DNA of 64,000 bases from Octopus sinensis. Lineage: Eukaryota. A model generated the notes under the pieces. The model saw only the letters and a list, made by a program, of their open reading frames with translations, ran no database searches and was not told the origin of the DNA. Of the stretch, positions 54,538 to 59,955 are shown piece by piece (the first letter of the stretch is position 1; each line of letters begins with the position of its first letter). The stretch is taken from positions 107,322,001-107,386,000 of the forward strand of contig NC_042998.1 of the NCBI RefSeq assembly GCF_006345805.1. Direction: 5' to 3'. The position numbers and the translations under genes are program-made.

Positions 54538-54592
54538 ACCTTCATAGTGTATCTCTGGTGGAAACCGAACAATTAAGTTCAATACATCATCC
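54538..54592 (-). pseudogene. Truncated U14 snoRNA relic
   Basis: Keeps ...gttcggtttccaccagagat...tatgaaggt but has a damaged C box (GGATGA), a 2-nt deletion in domain A, and no domain B or D box. Confidence 0.75.
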
Positions 54593-55049
54593 ACCAACAT
54601 TACAACAGTGAAATATCATCCCACTCATTTTTTCAAATGGAATGTGATTTTGCCACTAATTGTATTGCAATTTTTTTATTGCTTTATGTCAGCTAACTGG
54701 CAAGGTCTCTATTGGCGTTTCAAAATAACCACACTAAGGCACATGGAAACACAGGGGGGGGAGTAGATTCATTGGAACTTCCATTTCAGTTGTGTGTGCA
54801 TGTATACATGTATTGGTGGAAGCATGGCTGCTACCTATTTATATAGATATCCATCCTCTTTGAGGAAAAATTGCCATAAGCAGATCACAATATTAACCAC
54901 AATGAGAAGTTCCAAAAGATTTATTGTATCTAATCAAGACTACTGATTTATAAACTATAGCCAACACAGGGAGAGTGAAATTGTCCTATAAATGGACCTA
55001 ATTTGTAAATTATTCAGTACAGCAAACTGAAGACCAAGAACTGCACCAA

Positions 55050-55148
55050 AGAGAACTCAGACATCCAAGAAAGGAAGGTGACCTTCATAGAATACATCTC
55101 TGGTGGAAACCGCGAACAAATATGTTCAATACATCATCATTGTTCTCT
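55050..55148 (-). ncRNA. SNORD14: U14 box C/D snoRNA, copy 1
   Basis: AGAGAAC/GTTCTCT terminal stem, C box ATGATGA, domain A TTCGCGGTTTCCACCAGA, domain B CCTTTCTTGGATGT, D box CTGA (vertebrate U14: TTCGCAGTTTCCACCAGA and CCTTCCTTGGATGTCTGA). Confidence 0.93.
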
Positions 55149-55674
55149 GGAACATCAAATGCTAGGTTAAGAGGTCAGAATGACAAAAAAATTAGCTTAT
55201 ACAATATCCTTAATAATTGTGTAAATGTTCTACACATGATTGGGTGTGAGCCATGAAGTACTGGTGTTACATTGAAAGCACCTAGTACAGGAGTTGGCAT
55301 AAGGGCATCCAGCTATAGAAACCAAGCCAAAACAGAAGATGGAACGTAAAGTGCTCCCTGGCCCTGCTCATTTATGTTTAGGCATTTAAGCCATACCAGC
55401 ATGTAAAACGGACACAAAAAGTTGATATGTTGAAATGAAATCATTGAATTTTGACATTAAGTGTCCTCTTTTAAAGTAGGTTCATAGGATGTAATTCAGC
55501 TGTAAAAACAATTTTGATATTTCTTAATGAAGGAGACGATAGTGGATATGAAAACTAAGTTCTAAAAAGCTCGTCATGCCAGAATTAAGCTAATGTATTT
55601 AAAATTGTTTACAGCAATCAAACTACCAGTTAAAAGCGAATGGTCAAATGAGCATAACATCAGACTGCTGCAGG

Positions 55675-55773
55675 AGAGAACTCAGACATCCAAGAAAGGA
55701 AGGTGACCTTCATAGAATACATCTCTGGTGGAAACCGCGAACAAATATGTTCAATACATCATCATTGTTCTCT
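55675..55773 (-). ncRNA. SNORD14: U14 box C/D snoRNA, copy 2
   Basis: Identical to copy 1. Confidence 0.93.
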
Positions 55774-56160
55774 GGAACATCAAAAGCTGGATTAAGGTCA
55801 GAGCTTATGATATATCCTTAATAATTGTGTAAATGTTCTACACATGTATGGGTGTTACATTGAAAGCACCTAGTGCAGGAGTTGGCATTAAGACGGGCAT
55901 CAAATGTTTTATTTTATATTTTCAAATTTATTTTGTTTTTATCTTTCATGTAATTTTAATTTACCTCTACAATGAGCGACAAATTTTGATCAATTTCTTT
56001 TGTAAATCATTATTCTATGTATCTATACATTATTGTATCTGTGTACGTGTGAGTGCTTATATTATCTAGTTGATGGTATTTTGTTTTCTAGTTTTCAAAT
56101 TCCGGTCTTTCATTTTACTTATACCTTCATGGTACACCTGTCCTTTGTGCTTAAATTCAC

Positions 56161-56190
56161 CTGATGAATCCAGTAATGTACACAACTCTT
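56161..56190 (-). other. Candidate 30-nt exon of the snoRNA host transcript (B-type spacer)
   Basis: ttttactatag|aagag...catcag|gtgaat; conserved at 57700-57729. Confidence 0.45.
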
Positions 56191-56584
56191 CTATAGTAAA
56201 ATTTTGTTGTATACCCAATTGAATATTAGCTAATAACCCATTTTCCATAGCAGTGTTTGAACAAAAATTTTAATGACTTTATATCTTGTTGAATGTACCT
56301 GTATCTTCTGTAATTAGAGCTACTTTGTGACAAAAATTATGGTATGGAATTGGTTGAGAATGTTTCGTAAAATCATCTTCCAAAAATCACAATATTTTGA
56401 TAAATAAAAATGTTTTATGAAACCAGACTAAATTCATGATTATGTTAGAAATTAATTGAAACACCTAAGGGGTGTATTTTTGTTAGAAATATATTAACGA
56501 AAGGTTTAACATTGTTTACAGCAATCAAACTGTACCAGTTAAAAGGGAATGAATAGTCAAATGAGCATAACATCAGACTGCTGA

Positions 56585-56683
56585 AGAGAACTCAGACATC
56601 CAAGAAAGGAAGGTGACCTTCATAGAATACATCTCTGGTGGAAACCGCGAACAAATATGTTCAATACATCATCATTGTTCTCT
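56585..56683 (-). ncRNA. SNORD14: U14 box C/D snoRNA, copy 3
   Basis: Identical to copy 1. Confidence 0.93.
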
Positions 56684-57195
56684 GGAACATCAAATGCTAG
56701 GTTAAGAGGTCAGAATGACAAAAAATTAGCTTATCATACAATATCCTTAATAATTGTGTAAAGGTTCTACATATGTATGGGTGTGAGCCATGAAGTACTG
56801 ATGTTATATTGAAAGCACCTAGTACAGGAGTTGGCATAAGAGCATCCAGCTATAGAAACCAAGCCAAAACAGAAGATGGAACGTAAAGTGCTCCCTGGCC
56901 CTGCTCATTTAACCCATGCCAGCATGTAAAACAGACACAAAAAGTTGATATGTTAAAATGGAATCCTTGAATTTTGACATTAAGTGTCCTCTTTTAAAGT
57001 AGATTCATAGGATGTAATTCAGCTGCAAAAACAATTTTGATACTTCTTAATGAATGAGGCGATAATGGATATGAAAACTAAGTTTTAAAAAGCTCGTCAT
57101 GCCAGAATTAAGCTAATGTATTAAAAATTGTTTACAGCAAACTGTCCCAGTTAAAAGTGAATGGTCAAATGAGCATAACATCAGACTGCTGCAGG

Positions 57196-57294
57196 AGAGA
57201 ACTCAGACATCCAAGAAAGGAAGGTGACCTTCATAGAATACATCTCTGGTGGAAACCGCGAACAAATATGTTCAATACATCATCATTGTTCTCT
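57196..57294 (-). ncRNA. SNORD14: U14 box C/D snoRNA, copy 4
   Basis: Identical to copy 1. Confidence 0.93.
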
Positions 57295-57699
57295 GGAACA
57301 TCAAAAGCTGGATTACGGTCAGAATGACAAAAAATTAGTTTATGATATAATATCCTTAATAACTGTAAATGTTCTACACATGTATGGGTGTGAGCCATGA
57401 AGTACTGGTGTTACATTGAAAGCACATAGTGCAGGAGTTGGCATTGAGACGGGCATCAAATGTTACATTTTATATTTTCAAATTTACTTCGTTTTTATCT
57501 TTCATGTAATTTTAATTTACCTCTAAGGTGAGTGACAAATTTTGATTAAATTCTTCTATACCTTATTGTATCTGTGTATCTATGTGAAGAGCTTATATAA
57601 TCTAGTTGATGGTATTTTGTTTTCTAGTTTTCTTCAAATTCCGGTCTTTCATTTTACTTATACCTTCATGGTACACCTGAACGTTGTGCTTAAATTCAC

Positions 57700-57729
57700 C
57701 TGATGAATCCAGTAATGTACACAACTCTT
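57700..57729 (-). other. Candidate 30-nt host exon (second B-type spacer)
   Basis: Same acceptor and donor as 56161-56190. Confidence 0.45.
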
Positions 57730-58124
57730 CTATAGTAAAATTTTGTTGTATACCCAATTGAATATTAGCTAATAATCCATTTCCTATAGCAGTGTTTGAA
57801 CAAAAATTTTAATGACTTTATATCTTGTTGAATGTACCTGTATCTTCTGTAATTAGAGCCACTTTGTGACAAAAATTATGGTATGGAATTGGTTGAGAAT
57901 GTTTCGTAAAATTATCTTCCAAAAATGGCAATATATTGATAAATGAAAATGTTTTATGAAACCAGACTAAATTCATGATTATGTTAGAAATTAGTTGAAA
58001 CACCTAAGCGGTGTATTTTTGTTAGAAATATATTAACGAAAGTTTTAACATTGCTTACAGCAATCAAACTACCAGTTAAAAGGGAATGAATAGTCAAATG
58101 AGCATAACATCAGACTGCTGCAGA

Positions 58125-58223
58125 AGAGAACTCAGACATCCAAGAAAGGAAGGTGACCTTCATAGAATACATCTCTGGTGGAAACCGCGAACAAATATGT
58201 TCAATACATCATCATTGTTCTCT
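58125..58223 (-). ncRNA. SNORD14: U14 box C/D snoRNA, copy 5
   Basis: Identical to copy 1. Confidence 0.93.
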
Positions 58224-58750
58224 GGAACATCAAATGCTAGGTTAAGAGGTCAGAATGACAAAAAATTAGCTTATCATACAATATCCTTAATAATTGTGTA
58301 AATGTTCTACACATGATTGGGTGTGAGCCATGAAGAAGTACTGGTGTTACATTGAAAGCACCTAGTACAGGAGTTGGCATAAGGGCATCCAGCTATAGAA
58401 ACCAAGCCAAAACAGAAGATGGAACGTAAAGTGCTCCCTGGCCCAGCTCATTTATGTTTAGGCATTTAACCCATGCCAGCATGTAAAACGGACACAAAGT
58501 TGATATGTTGAAATGAAATCATTGAATTTTGACATTAAGTGTCCTCTTTTAAAGTAGATTCACAGGATGTAATTCAGCTGTAAAAACAATTTTGATACTT
58601 CTTAATGAAGGAGACGATAGTGGATATGAAAACTAAGTTTTAAAAAGCTTGTCATGCCAGAATTAAGCTAATGTATTAAAAATTGTTTACAGCAAACTGT
58701 ACCAGTTAAAAGCGAATGGTCAAATGAGCATAACATCAGACTGCTGCAGG

Positions 58751-58850
58751 AGAGAACTCAGACATCCAAGAAAGGAAGGTGACCTTCATAGAATACATCT
58801 CTGGTGGAAACCGCGAACAAATTATGTTCAATACATCATCATTGTTCTCT
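58751..58850 (-). ncRNA. SNORD14: U14 box C/D snoRNA, copy 6
   Basis: As copy 1 with a 1-nt insertion between the C box and domain A. Confidence 0.92.
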
Positions 58851-59399
58851 GGAACATCAAAAGCTGAATTACGGTCAGAATGACAAATTAGCTTACGACA
58901 TAATATCCTTAATAATTTGCGTAAACGTTCTACACATGTATGTGTGTCAGCCATGAAGAAGTACTGGTGTTACAGTGAAAGCACTTAGTACAGTGGAGTT
59001 GGCAATAAGACGGGCATCCAGCTACAGAAATGAAGCCAAAACACGATGGAACCCAAAGTTCTTCCTGGACCTGCTCATATATGTTGAGCAGTTTAACCCA
59101 TGCCAGCATGTAAAACAGACACCAAAAGAGGATTTGAAGTTTAGATTTATCTAAACCATGCTAAAATGAAATCACTGAATTTTGACATACTAAATAGGTT
59201 CTTAGTATAGAAGTAATTCAGCTGTAAAACCATTTTGATACTTCTTAATGAATGAGACGGTAATAGTGAATATGAAAACTGTAAGGGTTAAAAAGCTTCT
59301 CATGCCAGAATTAAGCAAGTGTATTTAAAATTGTTTACAGCAGACTGTACCAGTTAAAAGCAAATGGTCAAATGAGCATAACATCAGACTGCTGCAGAA

Positions 59400-59496
59400 G
59401 AGAACTCAGACATCCAAGAAAGGAAGGTGACCATCACAGAATACATCTCTGGTGGAAACCGCGAACAAATATGTTCAATACATCATCATTGTTCTC
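59400..59496 (-). ncRNA. SNORD14: U14 box C/D snoRNA, copy 7 (variant C' box)
   Basis: All boxes and guides intact; internal GTGATGG replaces ATGAAGG; GAGAAC/GTTCTC stem. Confidence 0.93.
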
Positions 59497-59955
59497 AGCA
59501 TGAAAACAGCAACAGATATAGTTACAATGAAAATTACTGGACTATCATAATGAAATATGAAGTGACCAACAATAAGAGCATCATAATAATGAGAAATATC
59601 TAACAGCAACTTCGTTTTTGTGTCTACAGTCGTGATCACTTTATAATTCATGCTCTCACAAAAATGGACAATAATTATGTTAACCCTAGCTCTTATGAGA
59701 GAATCTGGTCAGTTGAGAAACGAAGTAGAAACCACATACATCAAATTCACTTCATTATGCTCACATATATACACTTTTGAAGTAGTAGAATAACTATAGC
59801 ATGCTATGAATGCAACATTATAGCCTAGAGAAAAATAAATGTACACAAAATCAGTCAGATATCTGAAGTAACAAATACAAGATATGTAGTGCTGTTCACA
59901 GTAACTTGTACAAGTCTTTCATATAAAATTTCAAGTATTAAAGCTCAACTTTACA

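What the first reader, a model, noticed from the sequence alone, without database searches (positions are those of the whole stretch)
54538..59500. Tandem array of seven intact U14 snoRNA genes
Seen: seven 97-100-nt minus-strand copies with terminal stem, C, D', C' and D boxes and both U14 18S-binding domains, invisible to the ORF track. Known: U14 has a dual role, 18S processing through domain A and C462/C414 2'-O-methylation through domain B. Vertebrates carry a few copies in HSPA8 and RPS13 introns, Drosophila two, and plants short polycistronic clusters. Inference: a lineage-specific dosage amplification of an essential rRNA-processing RNA by tandem duplication of intron-exon units. I know of no description of this in a mollusc but could not check.
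Basis: partly seen in the sequence, partly recalled or inferred. Interest (0 to 1): 0.9.

Follow-up and report, generated by a model that had tools for sequence, protein, structure and literature searches.

The report
Seven tandem octopus U14 snoRNA genes
An octopus genome segment carries seven well-preserved tandem copies of the U14 small nucleolar RNA gene, which helps make the small ribosomal subunit; the array is real, but multi-copy tandem U14 clusters turn out to be common in eukaryotes, so this is an ordinary arrangement.

Summary
Seven full-length U14 (SNORD14) box C/D snoRNA genes lie head-to-tail on the minus strand between 55050 and 59497, and a decayed eighth copy lies at about 54538-54600. 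Each has a 7-bp terminal stem, perfect C and D boxes, and both 18S-complementary domains. Five copies are identical. The snoRNA block is far more conserved than its flanks (3/98 versus 92/232 variable columns). Rfam scores them at 50 bits, below its 64-bit cutoff, so routine annotation misses them. A model built only from unrelated environmental U14s scores them at 66-67 bits (E~1e-13). The window is from an octopus: one exon is 98% identical to an Octopus vulgaris protein. Two other C/D snoRNAs, one U25/snR56-like, lie just upstream on the same strand, and no coding exons flank the array, which suggests a non-coding multi-snoRNA host gene. The proposed intron-exon units are plausible but unproven, because the splice signals are weak and the acceptor lies 7 nt from the snoRNA. 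The amplification is not remarkable. Vertebrates have 3-5 copies, and 7 of 23 environmental contigs carry 2-5 tandem U14 copies, one with duplicated mini-exons and one with five copies in a ribosomal-protein (L7Ae-family) gene intron. This is a new member of a known kind, of low to moderate interest.

The parts
59399..59497 (-). U14 copy 1, the 5'-most on the minus strand. Its C' box reads GUGAUGG and its terminal stem is 6 bp.
   Evidence: Rfam SNORD14 50 bits; model R1 66.4 bits, E=1.5e-13; sequence.
58751..58850 (-). U14 copy 2, with a 1-nt A insertion between box C and domain A.
   Evidence: Rfam 48.9 bits; R1 66.3 bits.
58125..58223 (-). U14 copy 3, the consensus sequence.
   Evidence: Rfam 50 bits; R1 67.5 bits.
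57196..57294 (-). U14 copy 4, the consensus sequence.
   Evidence: Rfam 50 bits; R1 67.5 bits.
56585..56683 (-). U14 copy 5, the consensus sequence.
   Evidence: Rfam 50 bits; R1 67.5 bits.
55675..55773 (-). U14 copy 6, the consensus sequence.
   Evidence: Rfam 50 bits; R1 67.5 bits.
55050..55148 (-). U14 copy 7, the consensus sequence and the last intact copy. Its downstream flank differs from the other units.
   Evidence: Rfam 50 bits; R1 67.5 bits; alignment.
54538..54600 (-). Decayed, truncated U14 relic. Box C reads GGAUGA, domain A has a 2-nt deletion, and domain B and box D are absent.
   Evidence: Sequence; R1 22.1 bits, E=0.0095, over 54493-54598.
58703..58743 (-). Candidate 41-nt non-coding mini-exon, one example of six. 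The others are at 59351-59391, 58073-58117, 57148-57188, 56536-56580 and 55627-55667. It is flanked by cag| and |GTA. This is an inference only.
   Evidence: Coordinates. The segment is 95% conserved across units. Splice signals are weak.
55050..59497 (-). The tandem array as a whole. Short (~615-650 nt) and long (~915-933 nt) units alternate, giving a ~1.54-kb higher-order repeat that is 96% identical between dimers.
   Evidence: No part of the unit is found elsewhere in the window.
59955..60024 (-). U25/snR56-like box C/D snoRNA upstream of the array. It has a CCAA/UUGG stem, and its guide CACAGACCUGUU followed by D' CUGA is complementary to a conserved 18S site.
   Evidence: Rfam snR56 34.9 bits and snoU25 23.3 bits, both below gathering; duplex of -21.7 kcal/mol with the 18S 1209F site, a primer sequence typed from my own memory and not checked against the literature.
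60759..60842 (-). A further box C/D snoRNA candidate with a GAGG/CCUC stem, AUGAUGA and CUGA boxes. It is followed by a short exon-like segment that ends at a consensus GT|GTAAGT donor.
   Evidence: Heuristic C/D scan; weak Rfam snoR118 hit of 21 bits; sequence; donor.

Best explanation
This is a cluster of seven functional, near-identical U14 (SNORD14) box C/D snoRNA genes in an octopus genome. It was generated by repeated local tandem duplication and is kept intact by selection, possibly aided by gene conversion, while the spacers drift. The copies lie on the same strand as two other C/D snoRNAs immediately upstream, with no recognisable coding exons around them. They are therefore most likely transcribed by RNA polymerase II as part of one non-coding, multi-snoRNA host transcript of the UHG/GAS5 type. 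The mature ~97-100-nt RNAs would be released by exonucleolytic trimming up to the snoRNP-protected terminal stem and C/D kink-turn. Each U14 snoRNP would pair with pre-18S rRNA in two ways. Domain A would act in its chaperone and processing role, and domain B would place fibrillarin on the C five nucleotides from box D, the equivalent of human C462 or yeast C414. What is shown: sequence, copy number, architecture, constraint and complementarity. What is inferred: expression, host transcript, processing route and methylation.
For: There are seven full-length matches to Rfam SNORD14 (E about 1e-8). An independent model built without the window also matches them at 66-67 bits, E about 1e-13. The terminal-stem geometry (stem, one unpaired nt, box C ... 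box D, stem) is the same as in 15 environmental U14s, where the stem covaries strongly: 80% of cells paired versus 44.6% in shuffles, 7 of 7 pairs with double changes, and 0 of 500 shuffles as good. Constraint is clear. There are 3/98 variable columns in the snoRNA versus 92/232 in the best-conserved flanks (Fisher p=9e-14). Within recently duplicated subtypes the counts are 1/98 versus 58/534 (p=5e-4) and 0/97 versus 110/860 (p=6e-6). The relic at 54538-54600 shows what an unconstrained copy looks like. Domain A forms a 14-bp duplex (-17.5 kcal/mol) and domain B an 11-bp-plus duplex (-19.7 kcal/mol) with 18S sites documented by the universal primers 82F and SSU_R22. The guide nucleotide at -5 from box D is G, opposite the target C. 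Co-oriented U25/snR56-like and other C/D snoRNAs lie 460 and 1260 nt upstream. No Pfam-recognisable exon is found on the minus strand across 47-64 kb. The candidate mini-exons are 41-45 nt, carry stop codons in two of the three frames, and are not multiples of 3. The same organisation (tandem U14 plus other C/D snoRNAs on one strand) is seen in L006, L012 and L020, which carry several co-oriented C/D families, and more simply in L003, L013 and L015.
Against: There is no expression, processing or methylation evidence. Rfam scores are below the curated gathering threshold (50 versus 64 bits), although all 21 environmental U14s also fall below it. The C' and D' boxes are degenerate. Domain B carries a C-to-U change that is not seen in any of the 23 environmental contigs and gives a G.U wobble at position 10 from box D. 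The proposed acceptor sites lie only 4-7 nt from the snoRNA, which is far from the ~70-80 nt optimum known for vertebrate intronic C/D snoRNAs (my own knowledge: Hirose and Steitz 2001). The donors are weak and one is mutated. Identity among copies could reflect gene conversion and not selection on every copy. No promoter or first exon of a host gene was identified.
Confidence: 0.8

Rival explanations
1. The genes are the same functional U14 copies, but they are not organised as one snoRNA per intron. Under this reading the whole array, and perhaps the two upstream snoRNAs, lies in a single long intron or in an unspliced polycistronic precursor. Copies would be released by endonucleolytic cleavage plus trimming, as in plant clusters and Drosophila intronic gene clusters.
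For: The candidate splice sites within units are weak. The acceptor is 4-7 nt from the snoRNA stem, and one unit lacks the GT. Locus L003 shows five U14 copies between two consecutive exons of an L7Ae-family (RPL7A-like) ribosomal-protein gene, all in one intron. Intronic gene clusters of snoRNAs are described in Drosophila (Huang et al. 2004 and 2005, cited in PMC2246290). Polycistronic units are common in plants (PMC7277114).
Against: The ~60 nt just downstream of each snoRNA, which holds the candidate mini-exon and its donor, is 95% conserved between otherwise unrelated spacer types. The upstream C/D candidate at 60759-60842 is followed by a short exon-like segment with a consensus GTAAGT donor. 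Locus L012 shows that the one-per-intron design with duplicated mini-exons exists for U14.
Confidence: 0.35
2. The array is a largely redundant or neutral by-product of recent segmental duplication. Only one or a few copies are expressed, and the uniformity comes from recency or gene conversion, so there is no dosage function.
For: Dimer units are 96% identical, so the duplications are fairly recent. Tandem snoRNA duplication in non-coding host genes is described as an ongoing 'hotspot' process (PMC2653536). One relic copy has already decayed.
Against: At the spacer divergence of ~4-9%, about 4-9 differences would be expected per 98-nt copy pair, yet five copies are identical across both spacer types. 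All seven retain every functional element, including the terminal stem.
Confidence: 0.15
3. The copy number is an assembly artefact, with a shorter or longer real array expanded or collapsed.
For: Tandem repeats are error-prone in assemblies, and no reads or second assembly could be examined.
Against: The units are not identical. There are two spacer types of different length, 4-9% spacer divergence, unit-specific indels and two variant snoRNA copies. An assembler stutter would not produce this.
Confidence: 0.08
4. The copies are retroposed snoRNA pseudogenes or a U14-derived SINE.
For: snoRNA retroposition is known in mammals (PMC1687206, listed).
Against: The copies share ~170 nt of upstream and ~60 nt of downstream flank, are regularly spaced on one strand, and have no poly(A) tails. 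No part of the unit occurs elsewhere in the 64-kb window.
Confidence: 0.02

Closest known systems
Vertebrate U14 / SNORD14A-E (introns of HSPA8 and RPS13)
   Same: It is the same RNA family: box C/D, terminal stem, domain A and domain B complementary to 18S, and the short form without the yeast Y-domain. It is multi-copy in the genome: three copies in HSPA8 introns 5, 6 and 8 (PMC7277114, PMC2653536).
   Different: Here there are seven copies in one local tandem array produced by recent duplication. No HSP70 or ribosomal-protein exons are nearby, and the host is probably non-coding. Domain A has G where vertebrates have A, and domain B has a C-to-U change.
Environmental eukaryotic U14 clusters found here (L012, L006/L020, L008/L013/L015, L003)
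   Same: They have 2-5 same-strand U14 copies a few hundred nt apart, co-oriented with at least one other C/D snoRNA in most (SNORD12, SNORD52, snoR1, SNORD15, SNORD36). All score below the Rfam gathering threshold and share the same stem geometry. L012 has duplicated mini-exon and intron units.
   Different: In L012 the snoRNA lies ~75 nt upstream of a strong acceptor and the donor is consensus GTAAGT, whereas in the window the acceptor is 4-7 nt away and the donors are weak. L003's host is an L7Ae-family (RPL7A-like) ribosomal-protein gene. The window has more copies (7) and longer spacers (0.6-0.9 kb).
Plant U14 gene clusters (maize, potato, Arabidopsis; Leader et al. 1994 and 1997, my own knowledge)
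   Same: Several U14 genes are closely linked in tandem on one strand.
   Different: Plant clusters are tightly packed (about 100-200 nt spacing), are transcribed as polycistronic pre-snoRNAs, and are processed independently of splicing. Plant U14 carries the extra internal domain.
Non-coding multi-snoRNA host genes (UHG/SNHG1, GAS5, Drosophila Uhg genes)
   Same: Several different C/D snoRNAs lie on one strand with short, poorly conserved non-coding exons. Tandem snoRNA duplication in such hosts is documented (PMC2653536; Tycowski and Steitz 2001, cited in PMC2246290). SNHG1 hosts U25, and a U25-like snoRNA sits upstream here.
   Different: The host transcript, its promoter and its exons are not demonstrated here. 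U14 is not in these hosts in vertebrates.
Mammalian SNORD115/SNORD116 tandem arrays (my own knowledge)
   Same: They are tandemly repeated units that each carry one C/D snoRNA within a long non-coding transcript.
   Different: Those are orphan, imprinted, brain-specific snoRNAs in arrays of 29-47 copies. Here the RNA is a canonical, essential rRNA-directed snoRNA with seven copies.

Membership tests
U14 / SNORD14 (Rfam RF00016) | Box C (RUGAUGA) near the 5' end and box D (CUGA) near the 3' end | tested here: met
   AUGAUGA and CUGA are present in all seven copies.
U14 / SNORD14 (Rfam RF00016) | Terminal stem bringing boxes C and D together | tested here: met
   The stem AGAGAAC/GUUCUCU is 7 bp (6 bp in one copy). 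It has the same geometry as 15 environmental U14s, whose stems covary: 0 of 500 shuffles reach the observed score.
U14 / SNORD14 (Rfam RF00016) | Domain A: ~13-14 nt complementary to the 5' region of 18S rRNA (GAAACUGCGAAUGG) | tested here: met
   UUGUUCGCGGUUUC forms a 14-bp duplex (including G.U pairs) of -17.5 kcal/mol with the site documented by primer 82F; 11 of 1000 shuffles do as well. The GCGG variant also occurs in 7 of 23 environmental contigs.
U14 / SNORD14 (Rfam RF00016) | Domain B: a methylation guide directly upstream of box D, complementary to 18S CAUCCAAGGAAGG, with the target C opposite the 5th nucleotide | tested here: met
   CCUUUCUUGGAUGU is followed directly by CUGA. The duplex with the SSU_R22 site is -19.7 kcal/mol. 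Position -5 is G. There is one G.U wobble at position 10.
U14 / SNORD14 (Rfam RF00016) | Score at or above Rfam's curated gathering threshold of 64 bits (an annotation cutoff, not a biological feature) | tested here: not met
   The scores are 48.9-50 bits. The loss comes from the absent internal stem, model positions 49-74 (alignment). All 21 environmental U14s also fall below the threshold at 49-62.8 bits. The window-independent model R1 gives 66-67.5 bits, E about 1e-13.
U14 / SNORD14 (Rfam RF00016) | A stable ~90-130-nt nucleolar RNA that is required for 18S production and guides the 18S Cm modification | not testable with these tools
   This needs small-RNA-seq or a Northern blot, RiboMeth-seq and depletion experiments.
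Intron-encoded snoRNA in a non-coding multi-snoRNA host gene (UHG/GAS5 type) | Several snoRNAs on one strand, each within an intron, separated by short non-coding exons | tested here: inconclusive
   Three snoRNA species are co-oriented. Candidate mini-exons of 41-45 nt are conserved. However, their splice signals are weak and the acceptor is 4-7 nt from the snoRNA. No transcript data are available.
Intron-encoded snoRNA in a non-coding multi-snoRNA host gene (UHG/GAS5 type) | Absence of a conserved protein-coding frame in the host | tested here: met
   No Pfam hits are found in minus-strand open segments of 30 aa or more across 47-64 kb, other than transposon debris. This is weak negative evidence, because short exons would escape detection.

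The most novel reading that the evidence does not exclude
The unusual placement of each U14 could mean that octopus releases these snoRNAs by a route not described in animals. An acceptor-like AG abuts the 5' end of each copy (uuccag|AGAAC), another lies only 4-7 nt after its 3' stem, and the donors are weak. One possibility is plant-like, splicing-independent processing of a polycistronic precursor. Another is a switch in which the choice between the two acceptors decides whether a unit yields a snoRNA or an exon. A further possibility is that the fixed C-to-U change in domain B, absent from the 23 other U14-bearing contigs, reflects a cephalopod-specific change in the 18S interaction.
Probability: 0.1. 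Interest if true: 0.45.

Novelty: new member of a known kind. Interest (0 to 1): 0.2.

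Why it matters
There are three practical points. First, it adds a clean, apparently unannotated multi-copy U14 locus, plus a U25-like and one more C/D snoRNA, to an octopus genome. Second, it shows that Rfam's SNORD14 gathering threshold misses short-form U14 genes outside vertebrates and yeast, so ncRNA censuses that use gathering cutoffs (for example the giant squid genome, PMC6962438) will under-report this essential RNA. Third, the side result gives context for how this gene evolves: tandem U14 clusters are widespread in uncultured eukaryotes and occur in different host contexts, including non-coding mini-exon hosts and an L7Ae-family ribosomal-protein gene intron. 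It does not open a new biological question by itself.

Tried and rejected
1. The default Rfam scan gave no hits; the permissive mode was needed.
2. The many mir-297/mir-466 and similar 'hits' are (TA/TG)n microsatellite artefacts.
3. I tested whether the ~170-nt conserved flank upstream of each copy is a second structured RNA. The consensus fold is weak (-8.7 kcal/mol), there is no Rfam hit, and one copy carries internal deletions, so I rejected this.
4. I asked whether the repeat unit is a dispersed transposon or SINE. There is no blastn match outside the array, so I rejected this.
5. Organism identification failed via the mariner ORF (best hit 82%, and the element transfers horizontally). 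It also failed via a LINE RT fragment (best hit 70%, on an unnamed ENA contig). It succeeded with the exon at 37167-37724.
6. The Octopus vulgaris locus could not be fetched because the gene spans 327 kb. Exact look-ups of the mariner ORF and of three ORFs overlapping the array found nothing, so no second assembly or transcript could be compared.
7. My recollection that protostome 18S reads AACCGCGAA, which would make the domain A G a perfect Watson-Crick match, could not be confirmed from the literature. It is left as untested.
8. My crude donor/acceptor scoring did not resolve the exon structure.
9. Pfam scans for a coding host gene on the minus strand were negative.

Full report
**Observation**

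The default Rfam scan of the whole window reported nothing at gathering thresholds. In permissive mode, the region 53.5-60.5 kb gave seven end-to-end matches to SNORD14/U14 (RF00016, model positions 1-111). All are on the minus strand, at 48.9-50 bits against a 64-bit gathering score. The E-value is 1.6e-8 in that scan and 1.4e-7 over the full window. All other 'hits' in the window are microsatellite artefacts, apart from weak C/D matches discussed below.

Reading the sequence shows that each copy has:
- a 7-bp terminal stem AGAGAAC/GUUCUCU (6 bp in the first copy);
- box C AUGAUGA;
- domain A UUCGCGGUUUCCACC;
- a degenerate D'/C' pair (C' is UAUGAAGG, or GUGAUGG in one copy);
- domain B CCUUUCUUGGAUGU abutting box D CUGA.

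Five copies are identical, one has a single-base insertion, and one has two substitutions in C'. With stems, the copies span 59399-59497, 58751-58850, 58125-58223, 57196-57294, 56585-56683, 55675-55773 and 55050-55148.

**Is it more than chance, and is it U14?**

The sub-threshold Rfam score has a clear cause. The model expects an internal stem (positions 49-74) that short-form U14s lack (alignment). To test membership independently, I scanned public metagenome contigs for the two 18S-binding domains and recovered 23 eukaryotic contigs. Every one of the 21 U14 copies that I re-scored on the seven multi-copy contigs also falls below the Rfam threshold, at 49-62.8 bits.

I then built a covariance model from 15 of these sequences, excluding the window. 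It finds exactly the seven copies at 66.3-67.5 bits (E about 1e-13), the relic at 22 bits, and nothing else convincing in 64 kb.

The terminal stem has identical geometry in all of these sequences and covaries strongly. 80% of cells are paired versus 44.6% in shuffles, all 7 pairs show double changes, 0 of 500 shuffles match the observed score, and slid registers drop to 26-49%.

Domain A forms a 14-bp duplex and domain B an 11-bp-plus duplex with the 18S sites documented by the universal primers 82F and SSU_R22. The guide nucleotide at -5 from box D is a G, opposite the target C.

**Constraint**

The units come in two spacer types, about 615-650 nt and about 915-933 nt. These share only ~170 nt upstream and ~60-70 nt downstream of the snoRNA. 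They alternate to give a ~1.54-kb higher-order repeat that is 96% identical between dimers.

| Comparison | snoRNA, variable/total columns | Flank or spacer, variable/total columns | Fisher p |
|---|---|---|---|
| All units, best-conserved flanks | 3/98 | 92/232 | 9e-14 |
| Short-type units u2, u4, u6 | 1/98 | 58/534 | 5e-4 |
| Long-type units u3, u5 | 0/97 | 110/860 | 6e-6 |

No part of the unit occurs elsewhere in the window, so this is a local duplication and not a dispersed element. The conserved upstream flank shows no convincing structure or Rfam match, and one copy has deletions in it. The snoRNA itself is the constrained element, whether through purifying selection, gene conversion or both.

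**Context and organism**

On the same strand, 460 nt upstream of the array, there is a well-formed C/D snoRNA at 59955-60024. Its guide plus D' box (CACAGACCUGUUCUGA) matches the snR56/U25 consensus and a conserved 18S site (the 1209F primer sequence used for that site was typed from my own memory). A further C/D candidate lies at 60759-60842 and is followed by a short exon-like segment with a consensus GTAAGT donor.

Apart from one isolated plus-strand candidate and a repeat-derived artefact near 33.0 kb, a heuristic C/D scan finds candidates only in this minus-strand cluster. ORFs around the array are transposon debris, and no Pfam family is detectable in minus-strand open segments across 47-64 kb. 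This suggests a non-coding multi-snoRNA host transcript.

The window is AT-rich (35% GC), microsatellite-rich and transposon-rich. One plus-strand exon (37167-37724) is 98% identical to a predicted CUB-domain protein of Octopus vulgaris, on a 215.6-Mb record of assembly GCA_951406725.2. That gene spans 327 kb. The source is therefore an octopus, and the array probably lies within and antisense to that long gene.

**The intron-exon unit inference**

Six of the seven copies are followed by cag|CAGUCUGAUG...AACUG|GUA, a 41-45-nt segment that is 95% conserved between spacer types. It has stop codons in two frames and a length that is not a multiple of three, so it is a plausible non-coding mini-exon.

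Several things count against it. The acceptor is only 4-7 nt from the snoRNA stem. The donors are weak (GUACAG or GUAGUU), and one unit has GGACAG instead. My crude splice-site scoring does not single these sites out.

The two comparators show that both architectures exist for U14. L012 has each U14 ~75 nt upstream of a strong acceptor, then a duplicated ~65-nt mini-exon and a GTAAGT donor. L003 has five U14 copies within a single intron between two exons that match the ribosomal L7Ae family (RPL7A-like; Pfam 40.5 bits), with a SNORD36 upstream of the first of those exons. The processing route in the window remains open. I give about 0.35 to the single-intron or polycistronic alternative.

**Comparison with what is known**

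U14 is required for 18S production and guides one 18S 2'-O-methylation. It was the first intron-encoded snoRNA described, with three copies in hsc70/HSPA8 introns (PMC7277114; chicken HSPA8 introns 5, 6 and 8 in PMC2653536). Two more copies lie in RPS13 in mammals (my own knowledge). Plant U14 genes form tight polycistronic clusters (my own knowledge; plants in general in PMC7277114).

Tandem duplication of snoRNAs in non-coding host genes is described as a recurrent 'hotspot' (PMC2653536). Intronic snoRNA gene clusters and non-coding host genes are described in Drosophila (Huang 2004 and 2005; Tycowski and Steitz 2001; cited in PMC2246290).

In my metagenome scan, 7 of 23 U14-bearing contigs carried 2-5 same-strand copies, mostly together with at least one other C/D snoRNA. 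Seven copies is at the high end of what I saw, but it is the same kind of organisation. The 'dosage amplification' is modest compared with the five copies in humans.

I found no paper describing U14 or snoRNA clusters in cephalopods. The giant-squid genome paper annotated ncRNAs only above Rfam gathering scores, which would miss these genes.

**Verdict**

The feature is real and almost certainly functional. It is a new member of a known kind.

Residual oddities worth a look:
- the acceptor-like sites that hug both ends of each snoRNA;
- the fixed C-to-U change in domain B, absent from all 23 comparison contigs;
- the systematic failure of the Rfam SNORD14 threshold on short-form U14s.

Noticed in passing
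window 59955-60024 (-): An unannotated U25/snR56-like box C/D snoRNA with a CCAA/UUGG stem. Its guide CACAGACCUGUU plus D' CUGA is complementary to the conserved 18S site AACAGGUCUGUGA. It scores below Rfam gathering (34.9 versus 54 bits).
   Followed up: partly
window 60759-60842 (-): Another box C/D snoRNA candidate with a GAGG/CCUC stem, AUGAUGA and CUGA boxes. Its target is unknown. It is followed by a short exon-like segment that ends at a consensus GT|GTAAGT donor.
   Followed up: partly
window 54538-54600 (-): A decayed, 3'-truncated U14 pseudogene about 450 nt downstream of the last intact copy. It is a relic of an older duplication and serves as an internal example of an unconstrained copy.
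   Followed up: yes
window 31208-31306 (+): An isolated box C/D-like element (GAUGAUGA ... CUGA with a 5-bp terminal stem) on the plus strand, possibly an intronic snoRNA of the long CUB/LDLa gene. No Rfam match was listed.
   Followed up: no
window 55050-59497 (-), domain B of every copy: All seven copies read UCUUGGAUG where all 23 environmental U14 contigs read CCUUGGAUG. This is a fixed C-to-U change that gives a G.U wobble with 18S at position 10 from box D.
   Followed up: partly
Rfam RF00016, across L003-L020 and the window: All 28 short-form U14 copies that were scored (7 in the window, 21 environmental) fall below the SNORD14 gathering score of 64 bits. Annotation based on gathering cutoffs therefore systematically misses U14 outside the seed taxa.
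   Followed up: yes
L003 2873-4916 (-): An environmental eukaryotic contig with five U14 copies in a single ~2-kb intron between two L7Ae-family (RPL7A-like) exons, and a SNORD36 (63 bits) upstream of the first of those exons. This differs from the vertebrate host arrangement for U14.
   Followed up: partly
window 62216-63241 (-): An intact 341-aa mariner (Mos1-type, DD34D) transposase ORF. Its best database hit is only 82% identical, and it may be a recently active element.
   Followed up: partly
window 38100-42900: A ~5-kb tract of (TA)n/(TG)n-type microsatellite that produces dozens of spurious mir-297, mir-466 and mir-3149 matches in permissive Rfam scans.
   Followed up: no
window 33677-33889 (+) and 37167-37724 (+): These are exons of a very long (327 kb in O. 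vulgaris) CUB/LDLa-domain transmembrane gene. The U14 array probably lies antisense within or next to it.
   Followed up: partly
window 24179-25252 (+): FLYWCH zinc-finger and MULE transposase domain ORFs, the remnant of a Mutator-like element.
   Followed up: no
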